Origin: Bispira polyomma
Taxonomy: Eukaryota
Assembly: GCA_965649765.1 (NCBI GenBank)
Contig: OZ287757.1
Span: 24,180,001-24,244,000 of the forward strand
Direction of reading: 5' to 3'
Length of the DNA stretch: 64,000 nucleotides
How positions within the stretch are numbered: position 1 is the first letter of the stretch; the number at the start of each line of letters is the position of its first letter. Shown piece after piece: positions 1 to 53,879 of this stretch. Position numbers and translations under genes: made by a program. The notes under the pieces are model-generated. The model was not told the DNA's origin. It searched no databases and saw only the letters and a list, made by a program, of their open reading frames with translations.

Positions 1-346
1 ATACACACCTCAAGTAGACCTGTTTGCCACATCCAAAAATCACAAGCTACCTCTGTATGTGTGCCCAATACCAGATGCCCATGCCCTGGAGGTAGATGCA
101 TTGAACATCTCCTGGGAGGGTCTGGACGGCTATGCCTTTTGTCCAGTACCTCTTTTGCCCAAGCTGGTACAGAAAGTACTGACTTACCAGTGTCGGATAA
201 TGGTCCTAGCTCCGGGATGGCCGGGCATGACATGGTTTTGGGATCTGGTGGACCTATCGGTAAGACCACCACTCCAAGTACCTCAGTGGCCTCATCTTCT
301 AAAGCAACCATTCGGCCCCCAATATCACCAAACCTGCCATATCTAA
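1..346 (+). pseudogene. DIRS pol C-terminal DNA N6-adenine methyltransferase-like domain, frameshifted near 340
   Basis: DLFA..N, DA(L)..W, YAF(C)P and P.WP...WF motifs of the DIRS MT domain; the frame shifts before the expected LNLHVW tail. Confidence 0.75.
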
Positions 347-356
347 ATCTCCATGT

Positions 357-6477: not shown

Positions 6478-6522
6478 TCACTTGCCCTCTGCCTTCTTCT
6501 TCAGACGAGTTTCTTGTAACTT
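6478..6522 (-). CDS. CEP295: CEP295-like last coding exon
   Basis: cag|KLQETRLKKKAEGK-TGA. Confidence 0.88.
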   Translation of the reverse strand, partial: KLQETRLKKKAEGK

Positions 6523-9500
6523 CTGCAAGTAAAATAACAAACAACCCATAGATTATCAAACAAAGTTAAAAAAACAAGAGTTGTCTTAAAAAAAAAAGAC
6601 ACGTGCGCACAATGTGAGAAATATTAATCTGACAGCCCACAGTTTGGCGGGGTCAATTGCTTCCAAGCAATCCATAACGGCCTTACATATTATTTCCAAC
6701 ATGGGCGCACCTTTTTTAGAGTGAAAACAAGATCAGGCACAGAGGTTCCACATCCCCACTGCTGTATAGTAACCACTTTCCCAAAGATAGTGAGAGTTGG
6801 ATCAAGTTAGTTACTGAAAATTACTGAAAGGCAATTTAGTGAATTGTTACACAGTTACACACATAGTTACCTTGTTATACTCCTTGACCCTCTCTCTGTT
6901 TACTGTTACCATAGTTACACACATAGTTACCTTGTTATACTCCTTGACCCTCTTTCTGTCAACTCGTACCATAGTTACACACAGTTACCTTGTTATACTC
7001 CTTGACCCTCTCTCTGTTTACTGTTACTATAGTTACACACAGTTACCTTGTTATACTCCTTGACCCTCTTTCTGTCAACTCTTACCATAGTTACACACAT
7101 AGCTACCTTGTTATATTCCTTGACCCTCTCTCTGTTTACTGTTACTATAGTTAAACACAGTTACCTTGTTATACTCCTTGACCCTCTCTCTGTTTACTGT
7201 TACCATAGTTACACACATAGTTACCTTGTTATACTCCTTGACCCTCTCTCTGTTTACTGTTACCATAGTTACACACATAAAATTACCTTGTTATACTCCT
7301 TTGCCCTCTCCCTATTGGCTGCGTACTTCTGTTTTTTGGCATCTTCTTGCTTTTTTTCTTTCACGTCATCTAATTGATTGTAAAGCCTGAAATATAGAAC
7401 ACACAAATATAGACAGAAAGAGCACGACACAACACAGTCAAAAGGTAGGTCCTGGGAAATACATATCTGGAGTCATATTCACAATATTCTTGGAATGAAC
7501 TTCTTAGAATGATCTTAGTCTGAGCCAAACAGATTCTTTGAAACTAAATTGTCAGCTAATCAAATTGGTTGAGACAAAATTTTAAGAATAAGAATCTTTG
7601 TGAATACCAGTGGAGTTATTGATGTCATATTGCATTCTAGACGGGTGGACAGACACAGGCCATTCCAATGTCCACGCAATGTGTTACAATGGTGATAATA
7701 ATACCCCCCCTCCCCACTCACCGACTGGTCCTCTGTTTCATTTCCTGTTCCTCACGTTTCCTGTCCGCCGAAGACTTACTGCTCACCTTAGTAGGACTTG
7801 GGATTTTAGTGGCTGTAACAGAAACACACTTTAATCAGTGCAGGTATTTACAGTGGTGGAACATTATGAAATAGAAATACTTGTATATATAGTAAAATGT
7901 TGTCATTCCCACTTCAACATTAAGGGCCCAAACCGGTTTGATCCTCACTGCAGGCCTGGAGATTGTACCCTTGGACAAGGTGCTTCACACAAAAGTTGTC
8001 CCCCTCTACCCAGGTGTATAAATGGGTAACTGGCCGCTAATAGGTGTTAGTTTTTGTGCGCCGTATGTGGTAGCATGGCTAGTATAAGCTTCCTGAAGGA
8101 GATGAGACTGAACAATTGCTTCACAAGTGGAAGAACCCAGGCTGGGGGTGTAAACTGTAAAGTCGGCTGAAACTTCAAAAGAGGTGATATCAGACTATAA
8201 ACCTGCAGATATTTACATTTAAAATACTTTAATTGAGTTAGTTAAATAATAGTAGTTTAGACAACAGATTCCACTGTATTTACTTTGACCTACTTATTGA
8301 CAGTAGGTCAAAATTATGAAAATAGAAATAGTTTTATATACAGTTTAAAAACATTGCCATTGCCAGGTCAACATTAAGGGTCTGAAGTAGGTTCCTCTGC
8401 TGAAGATTTTTGTGTAAAGAGGGTAAAGCTCACTGGAGCCACAAATTAATTTACACTTGTGATCTAATACACGTTAGTCCCCCCAGAAGTCCACCACATT
8501 ATGTAGAAGCTAAAAAGGCCAGGCCTCATTTAATGAAATATTATTGATCTTTCATTTAAGGTCTTCATTCATTGTTGGAAAAGCACAAATGCTTACATAT
8601 ATATATATATAGCTATTTTAGCCCAATGAGTTTGAACAATAAAAATTTATTTCAACTAAAAATCTGAACTTGTATTGCTACTGTAAATAAAAATTAGCCA
8701 TAAGTATTTAATTCATAAAAATATCGTAAATTATTGACATTTTCTTCCATCCTAAAATAAACAAATACATTACCTTTTCCGAGGCCGCGGTTTTTCTTCC
8801 AGTGGGCCATGGTTTTGGTCATGTGGTCTCCCCGTGACACGTCCCCTTGTTTGCCCTTGACCTTGGCTGCCTCTTTCCTCTGCTGTGACTTTTGTATGAG
8901 GTGTCCTTTCTTTCTGGCAAACACTTCCTGTAGACTGAGGCCTTGTACACTGTCTTCTTCTGAAAGGTCTGGTGAGGGGGGAATATACAGACAGCAGAAA
9001 CCTCTATTATACAAACTTATATTATCAGAATACTCGATTTTATGAATTTATTTCCACTATCGCAAAGGTAAGTATTCTTATAGTTTTATACTGAATTTGA
9101 ATTGATTTACGTCGCTTTCAACAGCTTTGGATGTATTATGACAGCTAGAATTAGTGGTATGGCAAACCAGTACTGAAACACTGTAAACCATGAGTGGCAT
9201 CAACCTATGGCAAGTACCTGACAACCTTTCTCACATGAAGAAGGAATCTGTGGGATTCGATCCCCAGAACTGAGCGGCCAGTGATTTTAAAGGAGACACT
9301 AATAAGGTTTATACTGAAGTGCCGTCTTCTATTTTATGAACCTTCTATTATCCAAACAAAATCTAGCTCTTCCAACATGTTCGGATAATAGAGGTTCTAC
9401 TGTAGCAGAAATCTTTATTATATGAACATTTTGGGATCGACGGTACACTATCTCCTTATGAAGGATCTGGGCAAGCAAATATACATTACAAAACTAGAAA

Positions 9501-12500
9501 AATTTGAGAAATAATATTTACCTTACCCCAACCATTGGTCTTGTTGGCTGCTACTGAGCCACGGTAATAAGTCCTTGAAAGAGCTTAAAAATTAGGGTCT
9601 GTAAGGCCAGTTGGTGACTAATACACGCCCTAAATATAGCCCACAGTGGTAGGTCAAATTTTACCAGCAATGTAGACTTTCTGACACTGGTTTCCTACTT
9701 AATATGCTGGCAATACATTAAAAGGCTATAAAAACAATTATAGTTAATGAGATATTTGACACGTTCTTTTAAATCCCAAAAGAGCTATAAAGAGACACCT
9801 TACAAGTAATCTTAAGTCCGAGTTTTATTGTTATTTTGGGACAGACCACTGATCTCTCTACTCACCGTGTACTTTTCCCACTGGTATGGAGATCACATGA
9901 CTGTCTGAATCAAATAATCCCCTATTATCACCCACTCCCTCCTCCTCTTGTGTGGCTTCCTCCATCCTCAGCGGCGTGAATTCGTCCCACTCCCAATCAA
10001 ACAACGAGCCCGTGTTCTGAGGTGTTGGGGTTAAGGTCGTGTCTGACCCCGCCGATGACAACGTCTCCATGGTAACGAGACCGGTACTTGGTGAGGCGGT
10101 GATGCCACTGTGGTCGGTGGTGGAGGGGTAGAAGTGTAGGTTATTAGAGGAAGCAGTGGACTGCTGAGGGTCAGTAGCGGTGAGGTTTGTGTGGTCAGAG
10201 GAGAGGGGTACAAAGAGGGTCGGGGAGGAACCTTCTAGAGGGGTGGGGGAAGTCCTCCTGAGACCTGGAAAACAGGGAGAAAATAATTACAACATTGGGG
10301 TCAATGTGTGTTACATTGGAGTTTAAGGTTGTTGCTACCATTTTTTTTTTTTAAAAAAAATTGAAAAGCTTGAATAATATGTTGAACAAAAATATAAAAA
10401 AAACTATGTCACACCAGGCTCGTTCAAAAACTACAGAGCTTTGAACATGGTATGTATTTACATATATTTGCCTATTGTTTTCAATGGAAAAGCCGGTTTT
10501 GGGAAGGAAAAATTCCAGAAAAAGGTACTTTAAAAATTTTTCACCCCACAGAATTTAATTTGTTTCTCCCCAGTTGTGGAAAATTACAAAATGTAACTAA
10601 ATATGAGAAAAAAACGGGGTCACCGTGCTAAATTTTTTAAAATCTCAGTTTGTTTAGAATTTTTAGGGCCCAAAACCTTATGTTTCTATTGAAATAATAG
10701 GAAACATGTTGAATTTTTCTGAAGATAAACATCATATTTATAGCAGAGTTGCTCAAAAAAGGCAAAATGACAAATCATTCCCAATAGACAATTAAACAAA
10801 GCACATTTTCTGCAATTTTAATGAAAAAGTATTGAAATTTATTTTTTGGGGAAAAAAATGGTAGTGAACAACCTTAAACGACACATGACAAAACAGGGAT
10901 ATACAGAATTTTACCACAATTACACGGGCGGCCATAATTCTGGTCGGGTCACACTACCATCTTGCATTTATAAAGAATTTAGCGAGGGAAATTAATATTG
11001 AAAACACATGGTACTTCATCCCATGAATTAAAGTACAGAACACTATATTTTATTTTAAAGAAATCTACGGTCTAGACATTGAAATGAACGGTATTGTGAC
11101 CCAACTAGTACTATGACTGCCCATGTAGAGCCGTAGTGTTTCTATGCTTCCAAGAGTGGTAAATGTTTCTCCACATCAAAGAGAAATTGATTCAACAGAG
11201 TTCTATTTAAAGAGGTTTGACTGTACTTGTGTATATTCAAATATACTCATAACTTTTATAAAATCTATTTTGATCTCTGAAAATGCGATACAAAAACAGA
11301 TCCTTAAAATAAAGAGGGACAACACTAGGGTCAATGCGTGTTTAATTCTGAAGGGCACCGTAAATACAGGACAACACTCCCCCTGTTATCTGAATAAGAT
11401 AGGACAGCAAGTATAAAACATTAGGAAAATATAGCTTTGGGAGAGTAAAAGTAACATCATAAAATTGAATATTTGGATAACAGAATTTTGGATAATAGAG
11501 GTTGTACTGTAAAGCCATCGTCAGATTAAGAAATCTGCTTCGAATTTTTGTAACTATTATGATACATATATACCCAGTATGACATCGACCAACAAAGTAA
11601 GGATTTCTGAAGTTAATGCGTTTACTTCTATAGGGCCTATTCGATGACCAAGCATCCTCTGTGGCGCACATCCCAATCAGTGTGCAAAATAATACTCCAA
11701 TAGGAGAAAAGGTTTCTACCTAATGTTGGCAATTCAAATAATCAGCCAAATATTCTTTTCTCGTTTTTGATGCTAAAACATACAAAACCAGAAATCTGTT
11801 TTTTCAAACTCTGATGGACTGCAGATTCACAATTGAAATTTTGTTACATCATAAAAACATAACTGTGTGTCCATATCAGCAGACAGCTTTTACCACAGTA
11901 AGGCAACTGAGCTTATTTTATACCAGGAAATGTATTTTTATAAATAAATAATAATAAAAACAAGAAATATTATTCAAAAACATAACTAAGTAAATTAAAA
12001 TGAACACACATTAAAGAAACTTTAGAATTAGCAAAAAAATTTCAAGGTACTGGTGTGTTACTGTTATAAAAATAATATATGATGCAAAATTTAACATTTA
12101 CTCAAATTAAACATTATGTTACAGTGTTGAACCCTCTTAAGTTGAACCTCTACTTAACCAGGTTAGATATTTCTCCACTTAGAATTTAACTTAACAGAGT
12201 TCTACTTAAATGGGTTTTCACTGTAATTTTGTTTGTTGTATATATGACCGAGTGTCTGTTAAGTGTTTATGAAGAGGGTTTATTTCTAAATGTTTTCTAG
12301 AAGCAAAAATAACTAAAAAAATAAGTAAATTCCAAAGAAGCCCATATGGTTTAGTTGTTTTATATATTTTCAGTATAAATCACACAAATTTATCAAAGGA
12401 GAATTGGAACCTAAAACTAAAATAAAAAGACCAAAAAAAAAATTGTTTTGTTGAAAAAAATGCAATGCTGATGTGAAAAAATTTTGAGTTTTGTAACAAA

Positions 12501-15500
12501 CAAAAAAAAAAACCATGTTAGAGTAAGGAATCTAATTAAATATTACTCAAATTTTTTATCATTTTTACAATTTTTTTCAAAATCATTGATTTTGAATTTT
12601 ACTGTGCAGCTTGAGAATAAACTCGTTTGATTTTAAAATTTGCTTTAATTTTTGTAAAAGTATTATGATCAAATTAATCGCAATACTAATTTATGAAAGT
12701 GTAGCTTTCACACTTTATTTTTAGAATACTAAGATGTGAGTAATATTCAAAGATTTTATGTTAAATGCTGTATCCAATATATATTGCTTTACCAATGTTG
12801 TATTGCAAAGCATGGTATTGCAAATAAATGTTGGGGATATGTAGAATTTTTAATATAATATTGTTACATACGCTTAGTTGTTAGTGTATGGTTGTTGCAT
12901 GGGATATCGAGGATGTAAGCAAGCGCATAGTACCTCACCAAAAGTAATAGTGCCTTAAAAAATTATATACTAATTTTTACCAATAAAAATCGCCGTTTTA
13001 CATATTTTAAACTAACGTGAAACGCCAATCCTCGGATTTGGATGCTCCTCAATATCCCATGCACTGACTATATATTTGCTAAGACTCATAAACTGTTAAA
13101 AATGATATAAAATCGAAGTAACACCTAAAAACTGAAGGCCTGGTTGACATGTCCATCCTTAAGCAGTTAGTGACAGGCTAAAAATGAATATTGTTAAAAA
13201 AATCATATCATTTAGCAATAATTAAAAAACAAAACTAAAAGGCTGGTTACTGGGTCCATACTTGATCAGTTAGCGACAGGCTAAAATATTTAACATTAAA
13301 AAATGTTCAAAATGAAAACAAAGACACAGCAAAATCACAAACAACAAAATAATAGAGAGACACATTCTAGTAACTAAGGAGAGACGTGTGTATAACAAGC
13401 ACCAAAGATCTTGTCGTAACCGTTAGATCCCTCCAATGAGCTGCCCTGACTTCTCTCATGTCTCTCAAAGGACAGCAGGGAGTTACTGGTGTCCCCTGTA
13501 TTTACATCACCTAGATATAGGATACACGTGATTTATATGTCACCTAGATAACCATACATAATTGTCAGCAGGGAGTTACTAGTGTCCCCTATGTTCATAT
13601 CACCTAGATATAGGATACACACAATTTATATGTCACCTAGACAACCACACATGATTGACAGCAGAGAGTTACTGGTGTTCCTTGTCTTTAGTAGTGATTC
13701 CACATTCAAGTTCGATCAGCAAAATGGGCCCAATTTTAAAGTCTGGAAGGTCGGGGCAAAAAAATCAATAACATCCGTTTTTGGGCGGGAAAATTAAAAT
13801 GTGGGGCGACCTTCCCAAGCGAACGGGACGCTGACCCCGATTTTACTTGAACCTATATAGGATCAAACTTACTGGTGATAGGATCTGACGTATCGCCCTA
13901 GGTTCGAACGTATCGCCAATAGGATCTGACGGATTCATATCCGCGATCATAAGGATCAAACTTATAAAAAGTCAAAGTCGGGAGTGTTATGGTATAATAT
14001 AGATGACAAAATGAGGTTATTGTAACTGAAATAAAAGAAATAATACCTGTTTAGACCTCATTTTTGATGAAAGTTTGTTGTAAATAACAGCAAAAAATTT
14101 CATCGTTCGTGTACATGAACTGTATCGGAAGTGGGTTTGATGTCGCAAAGGTAGACAACTTTTAAACTGATTTCTGTTATCGAGACTGACAAATGGGCTT
14201 ATATGTGTATCTTCATATATAAATTATTCCCTACCTGCCAGACCACCCCGTTTTTGCCCCCCGACCAATACGTTTCGATGGCCCAGTAATAGGATAGGCC
14301 TGGAGTGACATAAGACCTATCAGACAGAACGTATCGCCAATAGGATCAAACTTATTCGCCGAAGCCGACCGTCCATTTTTAGAGGTTGGGGACGCAAGTC
14401 GGAACCATTTTTAAAAAAGTTAAGCATGCTTAACTTTCTTCCCAACCTTTCCGACCACCCCGTACACGCCCCGGACCTCAATGTTGGGAAGGTGGGGGAC
14501 TAAATCACCTAGATATAGAATACACACAATTGATCTATCACCTAGATAACCACACATAATTGACAGCAGGGCGTTACTGGTGTCCCCTGTCTTTACATCG
14601 GGAACCCCTTTACATCACCTAGATATAGGATTTACACCATTGATATATCACCTAGACAACCATACATGTCCCCTGTCTTTACATCACCTAGATATAGGAT
14701 ACACACAATTGATATATCACCTAGACAACCACACATGATTGACAGCAGGGAGTTACTGGTGTCCCATCTTTACATCGGGAACCCCTTTTATATCACCTAG
14801 ATACAGGATTGAAAAATCTATGAATATTAAACGGGTGGCACTGGCTTCAGCTTACATGGACATTTATGAGGTTGTTGAAACTGAAGGATGGGTAAAAGCC
14901 AACTACAGCCACACAGTGCTTTATACAAAAGGCTGAGTATTTTAAAGTGTAGGTAATGGAATCAATTCAAATACTGTAGACAGGAGTCATACAAACGTAC
15001 CTGTGTGGTCACTAGGGGTCAGTACTAGACTCTTCTCATGTTGTTCAAATGATAACAATGAGACGTCGGTCACTTTGCCGCTGGAGTTGGCATCATTGAT
15101 TGTGTTACCATTGTAATGTTGACTGATGTTATCACTATTGATACTCAGTAAGGTGAGATCAGGTTCATCAGTAATTCCTGTCTCAGTATCTTCCTAGTAA
15201 GTACAGTAAAACATCATTAAAGATCAATTAAGAGTCGATGATCTGTTGAAAAATCTTTGCGATTAAACAACCTAGTAACAATTGGCTGAGTTCCAACTCT
15301 ACTTGTGACCATTTATTTTAATAGAGCTCTAGGTGCTGAATTCCGTAAAACATCATTAAATAGTCGATGATCAGTCAGAAAATCCTTGCAATTAATCAAC
15401 CTGGTTATGATTGGCTGAGTTCCAACTGTACTTGTAACCATTTATTTTAATAGAGCTCTCGTTGCTGAATTCAAATATACAGTCAGAATTCATCTATCTT

Positions 15501-18500
15501 TACTCTAGCCAAAGGTATATGTGTCCCTTAGGCTTGTCCTTACCCCAGTAAACTTGTGTGCACCCTGTCCTTCACCCCATGTGTTACTCATTATACATGG
15601 AATAACCATATACTTGTGACGATTCATTTTAATAGAGATTTTAGCACTGAATTTAAATGTGTAGTCAGAGTTCACCTATCTTTACTCTAGCCAGAGATAT
15701 GTGTGTGTATACCTTAGACTTGTCTTTACCCCAGTAAACACTCCAGTACCCAGTCCCTTTTAACTGACTTAAAGACCATGCTTTACTCACTATACATACA
15801 ATCACCTATACTTGTGACCACTTATTTTAATAAGAGGTTTTAGTGCTGAATTCAAATATACAGTCACATTTCACCTATAATTTTCCTTACCCCCATAAAC
15901 TCCAGCAGCCCCTTTGAAGTCACCCTCTGTCTCTCTTCTTCATGTCTGTCACTCATATGTTTAGACTCCTCCCATAACCAAAAACCACTATAAATGGAAT
16001 GACCCTAGACTTTGACCATTCAATTTAATAGAGCTTTCAGCACTGAATTTAAATCTGCAGTAAGACGCCACATATCTTTACTCCAGCTATTGATATAGGT
16101 GTCCCTTAGACGTGTCCTTACCCCAGTAAACAGACACCCTCTATAGTAACCCTCTGTATCTCTTCCTCGTCTCTGTCACTCATACATTTAGTCTTCTGCA
16201 ATAACTAAACACCATGTATTACTCACTATACATTGAATGACCCTATACTTGTGACTAGGGGTGGGATCGTCCGCCATTTTGCAGATCGAGTGTCGAGCCT
16301 ACAATAGCGAGTTGAACTCGAGTAGCCGAAATATCAGTCATTGCAAAGGTCTAACTGTCCCAAATCCGGAAAGCCGCGAATTTAGTATGAACCAATCTCA
16401 GATACCAGTCTATAATATGGCGGCTGATGTAAACATACCACCAAACGGAACCTAGAGAACCAAAATGGCAAATATGTGGTGGGATATTGAAAATTATAAG
16501 GAAAATGTATATTAACTGTAAGAATTAGACCTAAATTATTGTTTTTATCTGTTTTGGATGTACATGTGCGAACTCGAGTGATGGAATGCACGACTCGATG
16601 TATGCTTCCATTATCACCCACCGAGTCCCGACTCGAGTTACGGTCAACTCGTCCCAGCACTACTTGTGACCATTCATTTTAATAGAGCTTTCGGTGCTGA
16701 ATACAAATATGCAGTCACATGTTGCTTATGTTGATATTTGTGTAACTGAGACTTGTGCTGACCCCCAGTAAACTCTAGCACACCCTGTGTAGTCACCCTG
16801 TCTCTCCTCTTCATGTCTGTCACTCATACATTTAGACTCCTCCCATAACCCAACACAATGTGTATACATGAACCTTACCGCAGTAAACTCTAGCGCCCCC
16901 TCTGTAGTCACCCTCTGTCTCTCCTCTTCATGCCTGTCACTCATACGTTTAGACTCCTCCCATAATCAAAAACCATGTGTATACATGAACCTTACCACAG
17001 TAAACTCTAGCGCCCCCTCTGTAGTCACCCTCTGTCTCTCCTCTTCATGCCTGTCACTCATACGTTTAGACTCCTCCAACAACCTCTCGTGTTTTCTCAT
17101 CGTCTCCTCAATCCTACGAGTCAGGTCGTCTAGTGGTGTCTTGTCCACACTGGACATCTGACCACTCACACCAATACTAACACTCTCCTCCTCTCTGTTC
17201 TCACCTATAGTCGTAGGGCGGCTCCGATCTGTGAGATAGACAAAAGGATTTTGGGATAGTACACCCTTATGTATTCAATTTTGATGAGTTTCATGTTTTA
17301 GTTCTCTCAAATTACGATTTCCTATGCTTTTTACACTGAAAATACCTCTATTTCTATTTTTGATACCGACCCAGTCCAACATGCCGCCAACCGACATCCT
17401 ATCTTTAGTACTCCGATCTGTGACAGAGACAAAGGGAATTGTGGGATATACAATTACACACAAAACAACCGGATGTATTCAATTTTTATAAGTTTTATAT
17501 TTCAGTTCTTCCAAATTATGTTTTGATATGATATGATAGATTTTTAATGTGCCTAATTTAGGCTAGGCATCTTCTAAAGCGCAACATCATTGACAAAACT
17601 GTTAACATCGTAGTTTGTTTCGAATGCAAGTTCGTGAACGGGGGGTGATGTGGAGGAGAAAGATGTCTATGAAGGGTAAGCGAGGGTGAATAGAAATATC
17701 TCTATTTCTATTTTTGATAAAGACCTAGTCCAACATGCCATCAACTGACATCCTGTCTTCCAAGAGGCTTAGTGCCACCGAAATAAGCACTAGCCAGAGT
17801 GTCCAGCTACTTCATGAATTACATAATCATAAATATTTTTTTTTTAACCTTTTAGCAAGTTCTATATTTTTTTTAACTTTTAGCAAGTTCTATATTTTTT
17901 TTAACTTTTAGCATGTTCTATCCATGCATAAACTGTAATTATAAATACCCACATATTATCACATTTATCCTAAAAAATTATGAACTAAAACAATAGAAAC
18001 AATGCATTTTAAATGGAGTGGCAAGTCCTTAACTTAACAAACACACTTTATAACACAGCAGAAACTCTATTGTCCAAACTTCTATTTAACTAAATATTCA
18101 ATTTTTACAAACTCAATTTCACTCTGCCTAATTTATATCTTTGCTTTATACTTCAATACCCCTTCTATTTTATGAACGACATTCTATTATCCAAACAAAT
18201 TATCACTCTCCCAAGTGTTCAGTTAATAGAGGTTCTCCACTCTATCCTCTCTACAAACAGAGCTTACCTGTAAGACCAGTAGAAAATGTAGGGAACGCCA
18301 GTCCTTGGGTTGTGCTAGGCATGCGACCTTGAGAGGTCAGGGGCTGGCTGAAGCCAATGTCAGATGAACTGGCAGACATCATACGAACATCAGGATCACC
18401 CGATGCAAACCTACAAGTGGGAAAAGAAGCTTTAGGAAAATGAAGTGGCTCTTGAGTCAACAGTGAATACTACATCTATAATAGATCTAATCTAGTCATT

Positions 18501-23020: not shown

Positions 23021-23054
<34 letters not shown>

Positions 23055-27600: not shown

Positions 27601-27651
<51 letters not shown>

Positions 27652-39600: not shown

Positions 39601-42600
39601 CAATCACTAGTAGCCTTTATTTTTTGGAACAACACTTTGAGACAGAGGGTTTGATGAACAATGGCCTTAAAACAAGATCATTTTGACAATAAGACTATAC
39701 CTAGCTTAGTGTTGGATGGATAATTAAGAATAAATTAGTTTGGACTTGACATCGTTTTTCACACATTTTGAGTCATATCATGATGGGCAGTTCACACTGG
39801 TGAATGAAATCAAAAGAAGGGGTAGTTGGTCATGAGTTTCTGCTCTGCAACCACCGGCCTTCAGTAAGTCTACTGCCAACTTTCCAACATGATGAATATG
39901 CAAGATTAAATTATACCTTAAGAGGAAATTCATTGAATGATTTAGTTATTTTAGCTCATGATATTTAATTAGGATTAGTTTTTCGGTGTAATAATCATGA
40001 TATTAACACAATTTTCAGATGACAATTTATGTCTTTTACTTCTGTAAACGGGCATAGTGGTGGAGAGATAGGTAACAGCTCAACAGCTCAGGTCATATAA
40101 TGGCCAGTTGTTTTTTTTGTAAGAGAAACCAGTGCTCAAGCACTGCAAGTCATGGACCTACACCAAGTAACTTTCCCACATTAAGGAATAAATAGGATTC
40201 GACACACATTGGTGATTGTGAAGCAGGGGCTTCTAACCACTAGGCTACTGCAGCTTTTTAGTATTTAATTTTGTTTTTAACAACCACAGGTTATTTATAA
40301 AATCCCAACATCCATGTCAAATAATAAGATTATTCAGTACAATGTGGGGCTATGTATATCGTACCTGCTATAAACATGTCCTCAAATGCCCTCTCCATGC
40401 CTTTCTGCTGTTCATCTAGTTCCTGTAGTCTGTTAGAAGGAGGTATAAAGATCTGCTTCTGTAAACACAAACATGCCACTTGGAAGTACTAAATATCTAT
40501 TATATATATGTTACAGTCAACTTGTAAAACCAGTCATTTCGTGTAATGACTGAAATTATGGTCCAGTCATTATGCATCATTTTCGAATGCAATTTTTTTG
40601 TTTAATTTAGCATTTTTTATCCTTATTTTTCATACTTCATCTTCTTTATGTGTAATAAAAAATGGCACAAAATGTTAACTGTTTACTGTTAAATGTAACA
40701 TAAAACATATTTATTTGATAAAATATGCATAAACACCCATTTAGTACTGCCTATTAGGACTAGATATTCATAATATAAATTTCCTATGACTAAAGATAAC
40801 TGTGGTTAATTCCATTAATACACATATACAGTATTCAGTAGACCATAAGTGTACATAAAATATCTAAAACATGTCTTGCAGAACATTTAGGATCATCAAC
40901 ACTTAGTATACTGATATTATCAATCATGTTTAATAGTCATAATCCTGTATGTGTGCTAACTTTATTACTGATCTGACTCCTGCTTATTTTCTGACTATTT
41001 TCTATACATATTTCCATAGACACTGGCTCATCGTAGGTTAAATCTCCAACACAAGAAGGTCTATACACATAAGCTGATACCTACAGACAAGTAGATCACC
41101 TTTATACTTAACATCTATATAGTATACACAGTTGACCATTCTGACATCTATAAACAACTTCACAGTCAGACATGAGAAAAATTTAGACAAGTTGACCACT
41201 TTTATGGTCATACATAAGACACATTTAGACAAGTTGACTACTGTTATGGTCATACATAAGACACATTTAGACAAGTTGACCACTGTTATGGTCATACATA
41301 AGACACATTTAGACAAGTTGACCACTGTTATGGTCATACATAACACACATTTAGACAAGTTGACCACTGTTATGGTCATACATAAGACACATTTAGACAA
41401 GTTGACCACTGTTATGGTCATACATAAAATACATTCAGACAAGTTGACCACTGTTATGGTCATACACAAAACACATTTAGACAAGTTGACCACTGTTATG
41501 GTCATACATAAGATACTTACTGGTAAGTTAGCCACAACCTTCTGTCTGCGTACTCTGTCTGACTTTTGGAGGTCACTCAGTTCATGTAAGATGTGGCCAT
41601 AGTCCTGAAAATAAGTAAATACAGTTACAAAGTGTAACATTATTTTAAAAATTAAAATTTCAACAAATTCACTTTTTATTTACATTGTTTTTCTTAGAAC
41701 CAGTTAATATTCAGTTGTCAGTTAGTTTGATAAACCAACAACTGGTTAATAAAAGGTCAGCTCTTGATCACCAGCAGATCAAGACATCCATTATGACTGA
41801 CTGCCCTGACAAGTCTACTTTAGCTAACTAACTATACACACTCAACAGATTACGATGTTCCTGATCTAACCGCCATGACATCCCTATTCCCCCTAACCCA
41901 CTGTACACACTCACCAGATTGAAACGTCCCTTATCTACCCGCCATGACATTCCTATTCCCCCTAACCAACTGTACACACACTCAACAGATTAAGATGTTC
42001 CTGATCTAACCGCCATGACATCCCTATTCCCCCTAACCCACTGTACACACTCACCAGATTGAAACGTCCCTTATCTACCCGCCATGACATCCCTATTCCC
42101 CCTAACCAACTGTGTACACTTACTAGATTGAAACGTCCCTTATCTACCCGCCATGACATTCCTACTCTCCCTAACCCACTGTACACACACTCACCAGATT
42201 GAGACGCCTCATATCTACCCGCTATGACATCCCTACTCTCCCTAACCCACTGTACACACACTCACCAAATTGAGACGTTCCATATCTACCCGCTATGACA
42301 TCCCACTCTCCCTAACCCACTGTACACACTCACCAGATTAAGATGTTCTTTCTCTATCTGACCCCCCCCTTCACCCACACCACCCACAAACCCACTGTGT
42401 AGACTCACGAGATCAAGACGCTCCTTCTCTAGTGCCACCTTATGTCGGACTCTGGCTTTCTCCCGCCTTTCAATCTCCACACGTTTCTTCTCGGCCTCCA
42501 CATCATCGTAACGCTCACTCTCAAGCTCTGCTGTCGCCTTGGCACTGTCCTAGTAACCAATAGCAATGTAAGACATGTTTATTTCATCATAAAAACTAAG

Positions 42601-45600
42601 TTGATCTTCATAGATGGGAAAATGACATGATTACATTTCTTGCATACAAAAAGTACCAGTAAATAATTTTGGTTGTGATCAGCGAGCTTGGTATAATCAT
42701 GGTACAGAACATGAAATGTGTTTTTCCACTTTTGCCTTGTCAGAAACACAGTTTGGAAATTGGAATTTACATTTTACGGTGGTGTCAACAGCTGGCCTGG
42801 GGTCATAATACAACAGCAAAATATAATGGTGGAAGAAACCAGTACCAAAGCACTGTAAACCATCAAAATATGGCAAGTACATGACAAACCTTCCCACATG
42901 AAGTATTCAAACCCACATATTGGTGACAGCCCAGTGATAGTGAAGCAGGCATTTCTTACCACTAGACCCCTGGGAACGCCAAGGATCTGGGTTTGATCCA
43001 AGCCAGATTTTTAGTAACTCAGATAATTACAAAAAAGTACCAGGCTGGTGAATCTTAGAGATGTCATTCTGGAGCTCTATCTAGTGCACATTGAGTTGTC
43101 TGTGACGTACCTGGTCAAGTTGCTGTTCTTTGACCACACCATACTCAGCAGGTATATGGTAGTGTGTGGTTTAGTTATATGATATACCTGGTATATGGTA
43201 GTGTGTGGTTAAGTTATATGGTGTACCTGGTATATGGTAGTGTGTGGTTTAGTTATATGACGTACCTGGTATATGGTAATGTGTGGTTTAGTTATATGGT
43301 GTACCTGGTATATGGTAGTGTGTGGTTTAGTTATATGATGTACATGGTATATGGTAGTGTGTGGTTTAGTTATATGACATACCTGGTATATGGTAGTGTG
43401 TGGCTTAGTTACATGATGTACCTGGTATATGGTAGTGTGTGGTTTAGTTATATGATGTACATGGTATATGGTAGTTTAGTTATATGACGTACATGGTATA
43501 TGGTAGTGTGTGGTTTGGTTATATGACGTACCTGGTATATGGTAGTGTGTGGTTAAGTTTTTTGACGTACCTGGTATATGGTAGTGTGTGGTTTAGTTAT
43601 ATGACATACATGGTATATAGTAGTTTAGTTATATGACGTACATGGTATATGGTAGTGTGTGGTTTAGTTATTTGACGTACATGGTATATGGTAGTGTGTG
43701 GTTAAGTTATATGACGTACATGGTATATAGTAGTTTAGTTATATGACGTCCATGGTATATGGTAGTGTGTGGTTTAGTTATTTGACGTACATGGTATATG
43801 GTAGTGTGTGGTTAAGTTATATGACGTACATGGTATATAGTAGTTTAGTTATATGACATACATGGTATATGGTAGTGTGTGGTTTAGTTATATGACGTAC
43901 ATGGTATATGGTAGTGTGTGGTTTAGTTATTTGACGTACATGGTATATGGTAGTGTGTGGTTTAGTTATATGACGTACCTGGTATATGGTAGTGGGTGGT
44001 TTAGTTATAGGACGTACCTGGTTGAGTTGTTGTTCTTTCACCACCCCATACTCAGCAGGTATATGGTAGTGTGTGGTGGAGAAGGCGTCGTGATCTGTGA
44101 ACTTGACTGGCTTCACTAAACACAAAATACAATGAAACACTAGTAACCATGGGGCGTATTGAGTTAACACATATTAATTAAGAGTGAACCATTTTAAGTC
44201 CATTCTTGCTTGTAAACAATTAAGCGCTTTGCACCTCCTGTTTCGTTGGGGCAGAGTTTTGTTTTGTTTTGAAGAAATGTTTTAGTTCCTTGGCATGTCC
44301 GATATTGGCTAATATGGAACTAATTTTGCCTTTGATATCAATCTGTTGACACGCACAACCTACTTACTTAAAACGACAAAGAGCCGTCATTAGCGGACTA
44401 ATTAGCAATAAAAGCGACTTACTTTGAGCAATCTGTAGTTCATCCACTGGATCTTTTTCAGGAGGAGGTTTTGAGGCAATATAAGAAGCCCTGTCTTTCT
44501 CTTTCTCAAGGGCATCTTGTCTGAAAAATATTGTTTCATCAACTTGACATAAAATACTAGCATAGCACTCAGTATAGATCATACATCCACCAACGACCCA
44601 AAAAATCCTGCTCTTTCTACCCAAATCTGCTTTAATACTCAATAGATTCTTTCTTGGCCCATTCCCTACCCCCACCTCAGCAATAACCCAATAAATTAAC
44701 TTAGTTACGCTTTGGTAAATCAGCCTTACCCACCCTAGCTACTTAGTTTCACTTTGGTAAATCGGCCTTACCCAGCCTAGTTGACTTAGGTAAAACACTT
44801 TCGTAAATAAGTATTATTTTTTTCCTTATCCACACTTATTTAACATTAACAAATTATTATTTCATTGACTTCCTTCCTCGCCCCAATGTGCTTGGTTTCA
44901 CTCGCTGTAACAATTCATTCTTCCTCCCCTATCAAGACTTAACTCACTGTAACAAATCATTTTTCAGTTCCTTCACTAATCCACATTCCTCACTGTGACA
45001 AATCATTTTTCCATAATCTTCTGAAACATAACCTGGCTCTGATGTGCATAGTTTATGCCACCTCTTTCTGTAACAAACCATTCTTCAATTCCCTCAGTTA
45101 TCCACATTTGCCTAATTGGGCACTTTAGTGGAAAACTATACACTAAAGTAATTTTCCACAGAATTCCTATTTTAGGGCTACCCTCACTGTAACAAATCAT
45201 TTTTCCTTCCCAAACATACTTTCCTTGCTGTGCCTGGTTTCTTCCATCGGTCCCTGTAACAAATCATTCGCCAGTTTACCTATATCCTTGGCTCCCTGTA
45301 ACAAATCATTTTCCATAACTACCCAACACATACCTAGCCCTAATTTGCCTGGTTTCTGCCATCTCTCTCTGTAACAAATCATTTTTCAGTTTCTCCAGTG
45401 CTTTCTGTCCTCTCTCTAACATCACTCTAGCATCCTCCTGTTTTACTAACAGCCTATCCTCTAGCCGACCATCCACGTCCTGTAACAAAATGTACAAACA
45501 AATCATTTTTACACTTGTTGTGATCCATATTCACGAAAGGACTTAGCCAGGTCTTAGGCTTAAATCAGTATAATTTTGTGCTTGATTTAAGCCTAAGGCA

Positions 45601-48600
45601 TGGCTAAGTCCTTTCGTGAATATGGGGCCAGTAAAATATAACACAAGATATATATATATCTTTTCTTGTTGCCACTGGGAACAAGACACAAATCTTAAGC
45701 TTAAGATTAAGTTAAAACTGTGACCTTTTGTGAATAAAATAAAATAACCACAAATGGGGTTAAAAATAAAAATAACCCCTGATATGTTATAACACCCTGA
45801 AACAGCAGTATAAAGTAGTCTGATTATTTGCATACTTTAGAATTACTTCCTGTGACATATTTTACTGCATTACCTCATGGTTGCGGTCAAATGAGTTCAA
45901 TACGATCATAATCTAAATCCTTTCTCTAAAAGGAATTGAAGTCCCTTTGAATGATCAAATGCAGTAAACCGTTATACTTTACCTTTTATGTATGTTTATC
46001 ATGTTCTTAAAGTCTTTGAAACTAATCCAGCGTAAAAGTTTATGAAATATAATGGATTAATCATTTGCTTAGTGTTAAAATTACATTGTACACTAAGACT
46101 AGCATAAGGTAGTCTGGTGTATTTTAAACATAAGGACCACGTAAAGACTAAGACATTTTGCAAATATAGCCCCTAAAAACCTGACATTTGCAATATTGCA
46201 ACCCAACTTACCTGCTGTTTGTTATACTATGATTTTTACACTTCTAAGTAAGTCAAGTTTAAATGGAGTTGGACACACAGATCTGTGGATTGGTCATAAA
46301 ATTACACAGGCTCCAAACATTATTTCGGTTGAGAAACGGCTTTTTAAGTTTTACAAAAATATGGACATGCCAAAAAATGATGGACTGCTTTAGAAACGTA
46401 CATTACTCGACATTCTGTGACATATTTAATATTTTTCTTTAACACTGTTTTTTTTTATGGAGGTCACTGTTTCGTAAAGCTCAATCTACAAACCAGTACA
46501 CTACAATTTGACTATAATTTGAATTTAGTTGGGTTTTGCAGTTTTATGTTACTTTTAACAATTTAGGTCAGATCACAACAGCCAGATTTAATGGTGGAGG
46601 AGACTACTGGACTACAGCAAGAACCCTGACAAGCTTTTCCATATGAAGGAATAGAGACTACAAAGTAAATCAGTTGACCAGGGGCTGTAGTCACAAACAT
46701 TCTTAGAATGCAATTCTTGGAATGTGCTTAGTCTCAACCAATCAGATTCATTAAAAAAAATTTTTAGCCAATCAAATTGCTTGAGGCAAAAATTTAAGAG
46801 TAAGAATCTTTGTGAATATCCGTCATGGTCTGAAAATCCATCAACATGTCAATACAAATTAAAAGGTAAAACTAGTGGGGGTCAACATCAATGGTCAATA
46901 CAACTTAACAGGTAAAATTAGTGGGGGAGTCAACATGCAATGGTCAATACAACTTAACAGGTAAAATTAGTTGGGGGGTCAACATGCAATGGTCAATACA
47001 AATTAAGGGGTTAAACTAGTGGGGGGGTCAACATGCAATGGTCAATACAACTTAACAGGTTAAACTAGTGGGGGGTCAACATGCAATGGTCAATACAACT
47101 TAACAGGTAAAATTAGTTGGGGGGTCAACATGCAATGGTCAATACAACTTAAGGGATAAAACTAGTGGGGGGGGGGGGGGGGGGTCAACATGCAATGGTC
47201 AATACAACTTAAAAGGTAAAACTAGTGGGGGAGTCAACATGCAATGGTCAATACAACTTAACAGGTAAAACTAGTGGGGGGTCAACATGCAATTGGTCAA
47301 TACAACTTAAGGGGTAAAACTAGTGGGAGGGTCAACATGCAATGGTCAATACAGTGGATTTGGTCAAACTCGAATGGCCAAAACTCGAAAGTAGCCGAAA
47401 TTCGAACGAATTTCCGATCCCCAACAATTTATAGTTTAATCTTAAGGAAATCCTCGAACATTCGAGCTACCCTTAAAGTCATTATTCGAAGCAAATTTCT
47501 GACTTTAAGGTTAAGTTTAGTATGGGGAAAAAAGGGATTACTCGAATCAAATAACGGACCGATCAAATAAACAACTTACCAAATAAATCAAAGCATATAA
47601 TCCGCCATTGAAGCTACACAAATGAAAAGCCATCTATCCTTTTAAAAACCATATCAAAGCAATGTTAGGGGATTATGTAAGCCGCCATTGTCACTGAAGT
47701 TAAACAACTGAAATGCTAACTTTCCTTACAAAATGTGATCAAATGGGTACCGCCATTGTTACCAGTGCTTTGTTGTTAGTGGTTGGCGCTAAACCTCCAA
47801 CATCAATTAAGGTTGATTGCAATTTCTAATTTCCCCCCTAAAAATTTGAATTTTTCAATTGGGATTAACTCTTGGTCTGATGAGTATAAATAGGGGTAAC
47901 AACTTACAGTTATTATTCAGTCCTGAGATATTATTCAATATGGCAACTAAGCGAAAAATGATTTGTATAATTATAGTAGTTTGAGTTCGTCTGAGTGTAT
48001 AGGTTGTTTGATTTTCGTTTTAGTATGGACCTTTTGTCGCAAAATATTAGTTTTGTAACAAGGATATAAAAAAGACATTAATACAGAGTTTTAGCATTTT
48101 TATTGTAAGTAAACATATATTCAACATGTATAAATAAAATAATTTGTTGTTTATGTTTAATTATATGTGTTAAAACGTGTTCAATTTTGGTGGAAATGAT
48201 AAATATGGTATTATCGCCCACTATTACTGATAGACTTCCATCACTCGACGATTCACAAAAGAGTTTATCACAACTCGAACCGGTCATTATTCGAACAAAT
48301 TTCACTGCTTTTACAATATTCGAGTTTGACCAAATCCACTGTACAACTTAAAAGGTAAAACTAGTGGGGGGGGGGGGGGGGGTCAACATGCAATGGTCAA
48401 TACAACTTAACAGGTAAAACTAGTGGGGGGGAAGTGTTTATTAACGAGGGGGTATTTACAGTAAATCTGTTTTCAGTAGCCCACCCTACCTCCTCCACTG
48501 CTGCTACATGAGCCTCCCCTACATGTTTGAGGTTTTTCTCATACAATTCCTCCAACTGTTGTAGCTTGGCTTCCTTGTCCACTTCCCAGTTCTCCTGTTG

Positions 48601-51600
48601 GGGAAAATAAGAGAGGAGATTGTACAATGTATACATATACTTACTACATGTATACTGTAATTAGTACATGTACTGGTGAAATACAGGGAAATATACAACT
48701 CTATGACAGGGAACATATTGTTACTTACATATAATAAACACAAGTCAGTGTTCTCTTAGAGCAGATACAAAGATATTATTTACTACAGGCAATCCCAACA
48801 TACACACTGTATATGTCACCGTAAGAGTGTTGTTTTGATGTAGGTGATATTTGGGGGATTTTCAGTGATGTTTGACAGCAGTATTTTGAATCAAGTGTTT
48901 CCATGAAGGCAATACTAATAGGTGACTGGCCACATTAGGCAATTTTTCCTCTTGTTTGGTACTGCATACATTTCCTGTTATTATTCAATTTAACTTGATA
49001 ATGCAAAACTCGAATAAAAATCTGGCAACTTTTTTGATAAAGGCATGGGAATGTAGAAAAAGTCTTCTGTCTAAATAATAAAATTGTATTTTGTGCAGAA
49101 TTATGTTTTCAAACATATTGAATTATTGTGCTAAAACTGTAATAATAGTAAAATAGCATAAAATTAATGTAATATATTTGAAATATTAGTAATAGTATTT
49201 GTGCCAAATTATGTATTTACACACATTGAATTATTGTGCTTGAACTGCTAAAACTGTATTCATGGTAAAATAGTATTGAATCAATGTCATGTTCGTCTTT
49301 ATAATATCTTGAAATAATTTACATGCTAAACCTGTTTTTTGTGTATTCATTAAATTGTCACTAATGAGCCCATAGGGGCTGGGAACTACTATTCTGTTTA
49401 TGTTATTGTTATTAAACATTGATATGTTCTAGTGACAGAAATAAACGAATAAACTAAAAACTATTACTCGAAACCGCGAAAACGTTGCACTTTTTGCTTG
49501 TTTATAATAATCTGGCATGAAAATGGCACCACATTGTCTATATGGAACGTTAAATTCAGCTGATTGCCTATCACGTGTTAGCCATTTTCTAACAATAGCA
49601 TTTTAGATAGAACTCTTAGTCTGATTTAAAGGGTGTAACTAAATATTAAAGCTATTACTAAACTGCTACAAATGCGTCACTAATGTACAAAGCTATCAAT
49701 TTTAGTCACCTCCCATATCTTGCTTCATTGTGGTCTTTCAGGGTGCTTACTAAAGGAAACAGAATCTCAGTCTCTAATAAATGTACTAGAACAAGTAAAC
49801 AGATTGAAACTTATGCTTTCTCTGTTGCAGAACCTATACTATAGAATAATTTACAAGCCAATATCAAATCCAAGTGTACCCTCTCTGGTTTAAAAAGCAA
49901 CCTTAAAACTCACCCCTTTAATCTTCCCTAGTAATTTTTCTTATCCATGTCACCTCCACAATCATGAACATGCTCTGTGAAAGGACTTTGATTTTCACCA
50001 CTTTGTAAATGATATTGAACTTCAGAAGATGCCTGGTATACTTGAGGCACGTTAAAAATCCATAATAGCATATCATCATATCATAAAGTGTATATATTCA
50101 CACTATTTATGTATATTGTGTGTAGAATCACTCACCTTAATTTCCTCTGCCAAAATCTGAATTTGTTTTTGTTTTTCTGCCTTCACATCCTTTAAAATAT
50201 TCTTGGAGATTTCCTTGGATTGTTGTCTGACCTATAAAATATGAATACAAATTGTGACTGAAGTAAAAGTCTACAATTTGTAGAAATTTCCAATGAGAAA
50301 AACCAACGTATTCTTGTAAAATACAGTCACACCTGAATATTTGACCATTCTCAAAAGATAACTTACAAATTGTAACAAATGTCAGACATGCCCACAAGTT
50401 TTATATTAAAATACATGTGTAGACCTTTTAGAACAACCACTCTCAAGTTCCGACCATGTATGTCTTCCCATGAAGTTCATTTACCTTGTAAACTAAAGAA
50501 AGTAATATTCTATGTGGATACTGCACAGTACATGTGTCATACACTAGAACCCATTTATGTTGAACCTGAAGTAGGGCTGCATCGGGTACAGTCGGTATCG
50601 TCAGTACGGGACCATTTTATGTGCCAACCGAGTACAAAAGTCAATGTCGGTATTTCGAAACTGCAGACTTTTTACTGTAAACGAACAGGTAACCATGTGT
50701 ACTGAATCATAATCATAAAAATAGGTTTGATGTTTACAAATTATTGAAATTTGAGGTTTTTTAATGTTTAGTCATTTTTAGGTAAACCGGTTTCGTGTAC
50801 TTCCGATTCTGGAGGGTATATTCGATTGAAAGTAAATGGGTTTATTTTGTTTGGGGTATCCTGGAATTGGAACGGTTTTTGATAAGCAACATCACGGACG
50901 CTTATTTTTGCTACCGACACACCCCTTACCTTAAGAGACCAGGAGGAATAGTTCTGCTTAACCAGGATTTCCACTTAACAGAGTAGATTTTAAAAGAGAA
51001 GACTGGCATGGGACTACAAATTTCTTATCCACATGAAAAAGAATTTGACTTAACAGAGTTCTAGTTAAAGGGGTTTAACTGTAGATAATTGATTTCCTAA
51101 TCCAGTGGCTATTAGCAGATATTTACTCTGACAATTGGAGGGGCCGTGGTGGCCTAGTAGTTAGCAAGCATTGCGCTTCACAATCACTGGTCTCTCACCT
51201 CTGGGCGGCGTAAGTTTGACTCCCATCGATGCCGATGTGGGAAAGGTGGTAGTTCCTTACTGTGGGCCGCTGGTTTCAGTGCAGAACCTTGATCAACTGT
51301 ATGCAGTGTTTTCTCCAGCGTTGCCAATTATCCGTCCCAATATAATCTAAACAGGTACTAGAGTGGACGTTAAATATCCCAATTCAATTCAACTCTGACA
51401 GTTAGAGCAGTGAGTGTATTGGGCATGAGTGACGGTTGGTCATGAAAAAAAATTGCTGTTATTTGTAGCGCATATACTGTTATTTTGCTTCTCAGAGAGA
51501 CGAAAAATTGTTGTGATCCCCAGGTTTCTATACATATATTACATGGAACCTGTAGTTGTTCAAATTAGGGGCGTGTCGGGCCAAAAAAATGCAGCCTGAG

Positions 51601-52016: not shown

Positions 52017-53879
52017 CTCTCACCTAATACATATAAAACAGAGGTTATGATTAACCTTACTGATCTCAATAGTCTAGCCTCCCCATTAGGACTGAATCTG
52101 TGCGGAGTCACAGGCTCATAGTCAGGCTCACGCTTCATCTTTCACTTAAGACACACACATATAAAACACAGGTTATGATTAACCTGACTGATCAGCGTGA
52201 TATCTATATCTGTGGCAATGAATCTCTGTTAAACACTAATAAAAGAAAATTACATTTTGTTACTGAAATAATACAGAAAAAAAAAAGAAGATATAAATGA
52301 CAGAAATACATACATGTATTTATAATCTTTCATATGCCACTACTAGCGACGTCACAGCTGTAAAAATTTGAAGTTGGCTAGTCGTCCTTAATTATTTGTC
52401 AAATTTTTAAAATATAGTTTATCCTAGTCATTGGGCTGTTTCTGATACATGTGACAAAACAGGAAGTCCCCCAATTTAGTATAAAATGTTCTTTTCCAGT
52501 TTTTCAGCTTTGATGTAAACAAAGCAAACAAGTTATAAATCCATAAGTGATCTGAAGAAGAATAAATGTCATTGTTGGATATTTATTTTCCTATTTCATA
52601 TTATAACCGATCATTTATTTTTTTAATTTAGGTCTGGTAGTTATCACTACTCCTATAGCCCTATCGGCAATAACTAGCTGGCTAGTCGTGCTTTCTGTAG
52701 CCACTTAAGCCCCAGGTGAATGATAATTCTCACAAATTAGGATAATAATGACAACATTGAGAAATAGCCTTTTTTAAAAGACAAAAAATTATGAGGCTCA
52801 GCTCAAAAACCTATGACTGATTAGTGGTATTAAGACTTAAGATGTAGCTCTTTTAATTACAATTGCCCCAATAAGCTTTCAGTACTTCTCGGTGCTCTGT
52901 ACAATGACAGATGGTCTAGTTTGCATAAAATCATTTGCGCATTAATATAACCAAGCTGTCCTTAGGAAAGTATGTTGGAGTAGTTGAAATTAAAAGCAAT
53001 TTACAATCTTCTCTTAAATCAATCACCAAGACAACAAGTGTGACATTGTGATTAGGAAAGCATGTGGATTAGTAAAAATAAAAGAAATTAAAAGCAATTA
53101 TTAGACACCAGAGTCAAGTGTATTTTAATCGGCCAATCAGAAATGCCCTAACTGGTTCGCGATATAAAGAATGAAATGATAAATGTAACACATCATTGTC
53201 GGTTCTTCCTGGGTCAAAGGTCAACACAGTTAAATGGCCTTAATTACATAAAATTACTTCCTTATCGCTCACATACACATGCTTCTCTTCTAAGGTAACC
53301 TAGTCAAGTTGTTGATTCTCGAGATCTCAATTTTTTAACCAAAGTAAAATATTTGCTATTTTATTTTAACAGATGCTAATGACATCAGCCCCATCCCTTC
53401 ATAAAGCGCAGTCAGTTATATTTATTTGGCCAATTAAATCATTTACAGAACTGCACTCAATAGGTTTGATGTATATAACGGAAAGGTTAGATACAAGGAA
53501 GATGCAATTAATTTATTCGCTCGAGTTCCGATGCTATGACTTCAAGATTTACTTTCCTAGTACAATATCGGAAGTTTATGATAAAACATCCAGTCACGGC
53601 ATGTATTTAATTCGACTTTCTACGCAAAGGTAAAGGTATCAATCAACACACCATTAAAAATATGTATCTCTTTATTACTGGTAATATAGATATGTAGAGC
53701 ACTAAAATTTAAAACATATATGTATGTACAGATAAAACCTAAAAATACTTATATATATAGTTCTAAAATAAAAAAAAACTGGTATGTACAGACTAAAAGT
53801 ATGGATTTCACCTTTTACAATTTTTACAATACCAAGACTCAGTTTTAGGTTGTGATTTGATGGGCGCACATCTGCAGTG

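What the first reader, a model, noticed from the sequence alone, without database searches (positions are those of the whole stretch)
6847..52192. Recurrent splice-junction-anchored tandem duplications along one gene (decoy splice-site arrays)
Seen: at least 10 junctions of the CEP295-like gene are locally duplicated or amplified with the splice site included. Donor side: exons 4, 6, 7, 8, 23, 29. Acceptor side: exons 1, 11, 23, 25. Donor arrays run into the downstream intron and acceptor arrays into the upstream intron, unit lengths differ (39 to ~300 bp), and ages range from near-identical to barely recognisable. The units are unrelated to each other, so these are independent events rather than one dispersed repeat family. 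Known: tandem duplication across a splice site is a proposed route to intron gain and new alternative splicing. Inference: this lineage may have a mutational process or selection that seeds tandem repeats at exon edges, giving decoy splice sites, intron growth and raw material for new exons.
Basis: partly seen in the sequence, partly recalled or inferred. Interest (0 to 1): 0.85.

Follow-up and report, generated by a model that had tools for sequence, protein, structure and literature searches.

The report
Exon edges re-copied into neighbouring introns
In this animal about one exon edge in eight has been copied head-to-tail into the intron beside it, about three times more often than short duplications arise elsewhere in introns, leaving rows of look-alike splice sites that behave like tolerated mutational by-products rather than a splicing device or new introns.

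Summary
Real, and not limited to this gene. The minus-strand CEP295-like gene has 29 exons in one open frame. In 19 unrelated dynein genes, 36 of 292 junctions (12%) lie in such a duplicate, against 4.4% of intron positions (2.8-fold, bootstrap 1.7-4.1). Of 87 local duplications, 40 span a junction (15-18 expected). Units are locus-private, always face the intron, and sit on introns that a related animal shares without arrays (0/98 junctions). Contigs from two DNA samples confirm the exon-array borders. Copies decay as expected for neutral copies, 128/134 detected decoys keep GT/AG, and only 11 would splice in frame without a stop. No intron shows the tandem-duplication intron-gain signature. 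Best reading: a high tandem-duplication rate, biased towards exon edges at birth, then filtered by selection; longer survival may add. Cause of the bias and decoy use are untested (no RNA runs). The scan noted this pattern in other windows of this genome. My searches found no paper describing it.

The parts
6478..52016 (-). CEP295-like gene, 29 coding exons, 2027 aa
   Evidence: Continuous frame, all GT-AG; ALMS motif E=0.044 and 0.0009 in exons 26 and 28, below Pfam's cut-off; exon 16 homologue and colinear exons 11-20 in a related animal. The name CEP295 rests on the N-terminal motif as I recall it plus the ALMS motif.
51942..52193 (-). Exon 1 start and putative acceptor duplicated once upstream (122 bp, 82% identical); upstream ATG copy is out of frame
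   Evidence: the acceptor itself is inferred
44867..45426 (-). Exon 4 donor, old array of about 110-120 bp units running into intron 4
   Evidence: z=19.5; bridged by one contig without differences in three runs
43098..44082 (-). Exon 6 donor: founding copy with 60 exon bases at 43104-43170, with a 39-bp sub-unit amplified about 23 times between it and the exon
41769..42436 (-). Exon 7 donor array, 69 bp x7.7, GT kept in the copies
41131..41535 (-). Exon 8 donor array, 42 bp x8.3; unit includes about 16 diverged exon bases, GT lost in the copies
38141..38716 (-). Exon 11 acceptor region duplicated upstream at 309 bp offset (69% identical, includes a MITE end); AG lost in the copy
17216..17761 (-). 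Exon 23 acceptor duplicated upstream (189 bp offset, 7 exon bases)
15216..17084 (-). Exon 23 donor: young 117-bp copies next to the exon, older copies of about 180-230 bp further in, filling most of intron 23; split by a 410-bp MITE at about 16256-16662
6840..7316 (-).
13088..13308 (-).
46842..48436 (-). Locus-private 49-bp array that starts about 55 bp after the exon 3 donor and does not span it; interrupted by an insertion of about 990 bp
13465..14815 (-). Locus-private 69/93-bp intronic array, not junction-spanning (background class)

Best explanation
These are by-products of ordinary local tandem duplication (units mostly 20-140 bp, often amplified further into minisatellites), which is unusually frequent in this lineage and arises about three times more often when the copied stretch overlaps an exon edge. 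Selection then filters: a unit that straddles a junction leaves one intact exon end and splice site and pushes its copies into the intron, so it survives, while frame-breaking copies inside exons are removed. The real site stays frozen and the copies decay; decoy GT/AG are tolerated, probably because exon definition picks the site next to the exon body and NMD removes most errors. Shown: enrichment, direction, locus-private units, decay pattern, old introns. Inferred: birth bias (partly shown), its molecular cause (exon chromatin or breaks near exon edges, unknown) and how decoys are ignored.
For: 36/292 dynein junctions vs 4.4% of intron positions, ratio 2.8, bootstrap over loci 1.7-4.1, stable at three thresholds. 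Peak centred on the junction and back to background by 60-70 bp. 40 of 87 local events span a junction vs 15.5 expected, still p=3e-5 against a two-fold survival advantage; with TE bases removed the odds ratio is about 3. With one divergence measure applied alike to all events there is no age trend, and the extrapolated birth ratio is 3.8-4.7 (95% range 1.6-12.5); youngest quartile 8/22, p=0.03. No junction has a copy on the exon side; far-side control 1/270. Identity to the real site: codon positions 1-2 0.94, position 3 0.87, intron 0.81, as expected for a frozen master and a free copy. The junction falls anywhere in the unit (exon share 0.26-0.96). Transposons are depleted, not enriched, next to junctions.
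Against: A second age measure (real site vs best copy) made junction events older than intronic ones (p=0.003) and the youngest class only 8/27, p=0.09, so longer survival may carry part of the effect. No cause for the bias was found: GC of intronic units 0.349 vs 0.335 (p=0.17), no CpG excess at breakpoints (4/37 vs 20%), 10-bp length periodicity not robust. The sample is 19 dynein genes plus this gene, and rates differ among genes (p=0.007).
Confidence: 0.6

Rival explanations
1. Survival alone: duplications arise evenly, but junction-spanning ones last longer because one copy is frozen by selection and nearby deletions are constrained.
For: Share of junction events rises from 30% to 50-64% with age under the master-to-copy measure. 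Flanks 50-300 bp from junctions hold old rather than young transposon fragments.
Against: A two-fold advantage predicts 24 events, 40 seen. No age slope under the symmetric measure. Ratio 3.5 among copies at least 93% identical (this measure favours junction events somewhat).
Confidence: 0.2
2. Splicing-coupled mutagenesis: spliceosome pausing, R-loops or splicing intermediates cause breaks or prime re-synthesis at the junction itself in the germ line.
For: Narrow peak at the junction; repeated events at one junction at different ages, for example exon 23 donor; differences among genes.
Against: Unit ends do not coincide with splice sites; units contain intron sequence, so they are not copies of spliced RNA; donors and acceptors are hit about equally (19 vs 17), which needs a symmetric cause; the peak shape also follows from an exon-wide bias plus filtering.
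Confidence: 0.12
3. Decoy arrays are kept by selection as splicing regulators or as a source of alternative exon ends.
For: 128 of 134 decoys keep GT/AG; dinucleotide identity 0.99 vs 0.94 at frozen exon positions; 25 of 43 events have a decoy scoring at least as well as the real site.
Against: Detection anchors on the junction and drops copies that lost it (exons 8, 11), so this is biased upward; about 4 changes expected vs under 1 seen is borderline, and the paired test is inflated because each event has only two such positions. No arrays at orthologous junctions in the relative. Unit lengths show no excess of multiples of three (10 of 40); 11/128 decoys are in frame and stop-free.
Confidence: 0.06
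4. Assembly artefact or a dispersed repeat family.
For: Arrays are hard to assemble; two of the three runs come from one sample, possibly the assembled one.
Against: Copies differ by 2-30%; contigs of two samples cross exon-array borders with no differences and summed word depth rises over the arrays; units have no match elsewhere where tested (those searches score only the best candidates).
Confidence: 0.02

Closest known systems
Intron gain by tandem genomic duplication (Rogers model; PMC3443670, PMC4974935)
   Same: A tandem duplication creates a second splice-site-like motif next to the first.
   Different: There an exonic AGGT segment is duplicated and the span between copies becomes a new intron. 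Here an existing junction is copied into an old intron; 0 of 174 introns show the signature and exon sizes match the relative's.
Internal tandem repeats at exon-intron boundaries of human segmental-duplication genes (PMC2812944)
   Same: Locus-specific tandem repeats at exon-intron borders that can carry splice sites.
   Different: That study found 27 intron modifications in young primate paralogues and tied them to new introns and alternative transcripts; it did not test enrichment at junctions in the passages I read. Here 12% of junctions of old conserved genes are affected and no transcript change is shown.
Minisatellite birth from unique sequence by slippage, break repair or unequal exchange (own knowledge)
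   Same: Private units of 20-140 bp, 2-20 copies, sub-unit re-amplification, later transposon insertions.
   Different: The bias towards exon edges is not part of the model as I know it.
microDNA circles (PMC11660679) and SPO11 double-cut duplications (PMC13532658)
   Same: microDNA is enriched in exons and GC-rich unique DNA; SPO11 double cuts give germ-line duplications and have a 10-bp length periodicity. Either could supply an exon-biased source.
   Different: No GC or CpG dependence found; periodicity only suggestive, p 0.02-0.3, and absent in junction units. Leads, not matches.
Introners (PMC9860276, abstract only)
   Same: Lineage-specific, genome-wide change at intron positions.
   Different: Introners are one mobile family making new introns; these units are unrelated and make none.

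Membership tests
Intron gain by tandem genomic duplication | Intron start resembles the next exon's start, or intron end resembles the previous exon's end | tested here: not met
   0 of 174 introns at 13/20 matches
Intron gain by tandem genomic duplication | Intron absent in relatives | tested here: not met
   Orthologous dynein exons have the same sizes in the relative, including the one with the L003 array. CEP295 intron 15 is absent there but has no array or signature. Most arrayed CEP295 junctions lie outside the relative's locus.
Locus-specific minisatellite or tandem duplication | Head-to-tail copies of local unique sequence, no dispersed family | tested here: met
Dispersed repeat or introner family | Units related to each other or to copies elsewhere | tested here: not met
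   1 of 41 spanning events scored as dispersed, and that through an inserted MITE
Regulatory decoy splice sites or alternative 5'/3' sites | Use or binding by the spliceosome in transcripts | not testable with these tools
   No RNA run listed
Regulatory decoy splice sites or alternative 5'/3' sites | Conservation beyond neutral expectation | tested here: inconclusive
   GT/AG 0.99 vs 0.94, with detection bias; absent at orthologous junctions of the relative
SPO11 double-cut or circle-derived duplication | About 10-bp periodicity of unit length | tested here: inconclusive
   Rayleigh p=0.005 fell to p 0.02-0.3 against a smooth null
CEP295 family | C-terminal ALMS motif | tested here: inconclusive
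   Colinear hits below the curated cut-off, scanned exon by exon

The most novel reading that the evidence does not exclude
This lineage has a germ-line mutational process, tied to exon chromatin or to co-transcriptional splicing, that duplicates DNA specifically across exon-intron borders genome-wide and has left roughly one junction in eight with intact decoy splice sites that the spliceosome ignores.
Probability: 0.35. Interest if true: 0.85.

Novelty: new variant of a known kind. Interest (0 to 1): 0.6.

Why it matters
If the bias is at birth, gene architecture itself steers where structural mutations arise, which is not part of standard models of minisatellite origin as I know them. The genome is also a natural experiment on splice-site choice: if 12% holds genome-wide, many thousands of real sites sit beside near-identical decoys, over half of the events having a decoy that scores as well as the real site, on both donor and acceptor sides. 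RNA-seq would test exon definition against first-come choice directly. In practice, the copies can mislead gene prediction and read mapping in this genome.

Tried and rejected
GC content as the cause. Methyl-CpG repair at breakpoints: genes are CpG-depleted (o/e about 0.35) but breakpoints are not CpG-rich. Weak real splice sites attracting copies: no difference in site score. Polarised growth with youngest copies next to the exon: seen at exon 23 but not overall, 10 vs 13. Helical periodicity of unit length: not robust. Frame bias of units: the CEP295 donor units are mostly multiples of three, the pooled set is not. The one apparent junction event in the relative (L028:15220) is an in-frame repeat inside one open exon. 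Eight paper searches found no description of a genome-wide junction bias; subscription journals are mostly missing, and PMC1783408 was not held. The organism could not be named. The exons were joined only inside scripts, for the frame check and to align against locus L028.

Full report
The gene. The window (G000 contig C10, a 1.035 Gb animal genome in 75 contigs) holds a minus-strand gene of 29 coding exons from 52016 to 6478. All introns are GT-AG and the exons join into 2027 codons and a stop. Exons 26 and 28 hit the ALMS motif weakly and in order, which fits CEP295. No RNA run is listed, so the model rests on the open frame and on a related animal's orthologue.

The observation. An alignment anchored on each junction, needing similarity on both sides, found copies at the acceptors of exons 1 and 23 and the donors of exons 4, 6, 7, 23 and 28; shuffled sequence gave none. 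Exon 8 donor and exon 11 acceptor also copy the exon edge but their copies lost the GT or AG. The window is rich in repeats generally: 22% of intron positions lie in some local repeat, so the window alone could not show enrichment. Contigs from three DNA runs of two samples cross the exon 4, 6, 7 and 8 array borders without differences, one spans the whole exon 4 array, and depth rises over the arrays. The exon 28 array and two intronic arrays have no match elsewhere in the genome, and the best matches to the exon 4-8 and exon 23 regions are to inserted transposons, not to array units.

Test in other genes. I located dynein heavy chain genes, fetched 10 kb of each of 20, and annotated them with a spliced aligner using eight homologues per locus, keeping introns supported by at least six. 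One recent paralogue was dropped. In 146 introns of 19 genes on 9 contigs, 19 donors and 17 acceptors lie in the exon-side unit of a local duplicate (12.3%), against 4.4% of intron positions by the same rule. The ratio is 2.8, bootstrap over loci 1.7-4.1, and 2.6 at stricter thresholds. The profile peaks at the junction and returns to background within 60-70 bp. No junction has a copy on the exon side, and exon edges match the far-side intron in 1 of 270 cases. Counting events, with this gene included, 40 of 87 non-dispersed duplications span a junction against 15.5 expected from random placement, or about 18 when transposon bases are removed. A looser test gives 14% of donors and 17% of acceptors, some through transposon ends. 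Rates differ among genes, from 0/30 to 7/22.

Other species. Orthologous dynein and CEP295 stretches from a related animal (ENA ERZ22147071, 87-89% identical in dynein) have the same dynein exon sizes and 0 of 98 junctions duplicated, once an in-exon repeat is set aside (p=2e-5). Killifish 0/152, scorpion 0/26, a further ENA animal contig 0/46. These genomes have far fewer local repeats overall (0-11% of intron positions vs about 19%), so they show that the load is lineage-specific but cannot show whether the bias is.

What the copies are. Identity to the real junction is 0.94 at codon positions 1-2, 0.87 at position 3 and 0.81 in the intron part, the pattern of a frozen original and a free copy; CpG at third positions has mostly changed. 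Of 134 decoys 128 keep GT or AG, and 25 of 43 events have a decoy scoring at least as well as the real site. They are not being purged; detection bias prevents a claim that they are kept. Only 11 intact decoys would add an in-frame, stop-free piece. The junction lies anywhere in the unit, so unit ends are not set by the splice site and the template was unspliced DNA or pre-mRNA. No intron shows the signature of intron gain by duplication (model in PMC3443670). Junction-derived copies make up about 7% of intron bases.

Birth or survival. A frozen copy lasts longer, but a two-fold advantage predicts 24 events, not 40. Two age measures disagree. Comparing the real site with its best copy, junction events look older and the youngest class is only weakly enriched (8/27, p=0.09). 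Using one whole-event measure for all classes, there is no trend and the birth ratio extrapolates to about 4 (range 1.6-12.5). I read this as a birth bias with a possible survival term. Transposons are depleted next to junctions, so exon flanks are not general sinks for insertions. GC, CpG, splice-site strength and helical periodicity gave no explanation. Exon-enriched microDNA (PMC11660679) and SPO11 double cuts (PMC13532658) are candidate sources only.

Comparison and verdict. Repeats at exon-intron borders are known at single loci and in young human paralogues (PMC2812944, PMC4974935). I found no paper reporting a genome-wide excess of junction-spanning duplications in old genes, within an incomplete library. 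The scan noted the same pattern in other windows of this genome, and one follow-up reached a similar reading; these are unchecked notes, and my numbers come from my own loci. The parts are ordinary tandem duplications; the bias, its scale and the tolerated decoys are the new part. Searches were made exon by exon and the joined model was not sent to any search tool.

Noticed in passing
window 34071-34429: CEP295 intron 15 is absent in the relative's orthologue (L028), where exons 15 and 16 are one open exon; gain here or loss there, with no duplication signature.
   Followed up: partly
window 38226-38247, 34625-34645; L010, L012: One end of a common MITE lies within 40 bp upstream of acceptors in 5 of 24 cases (1.1 expected), in one orientation only. 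It may supply or tolerate 3' splice signals.
   Followed up: partly
window 16256-16662: A 410-bp element about 98% identical to many copies across the genome, so recently active, inserted inside the exon 23 donor array.
   Followed up: partly
window 33277-33572: In-frame 144/156-bp tandem repeat inside exon 16; the relative has its own repeats (33-246 bp offsets) in this exon and an in-frame 153-bp repeat in exon 20.
   Followed up: partly
all arrays in window and L003-L022: Unit lengths cluster near multiples of about 10.2 bp, mainly in older and non-junction arrays; not significant against a smooth null. Worth testing genome-wide.
   Followed up: partly
window 1-1522: Plus-strand overlapping ORFs that look like the RNase H and tyrosine-recombinase end of a DIRS-type retroelement (from reading the translation).
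   Followed up: no
window 54300-55700: Decayed transposase-like ORFs on the minus strand next to a 24/48-bp array with a long open frame.
   Followed up: no
window 25360-26302; L016: 143-bp satellite inside a dispersed element, also in other loci; background class, unrelated to junctions.
   Followed up: no
L019 and L020 (C5:46.77 Mb and C5:17.74 Mb): Two dynein heavy chain loci 29 Mb apart are 95-97% identical over 5 kb and about 82-87% further upstream, suggesting a recent duplication or partial conversion.
   Followed up: partly
window 41041-41679 and 43820-44173: The reading frame runs open through the exon 8 and exon 6 donor arrays for 100-200 codons; a 39-bp in-frame extension of exon 6 is possible.
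   Followed up: partly
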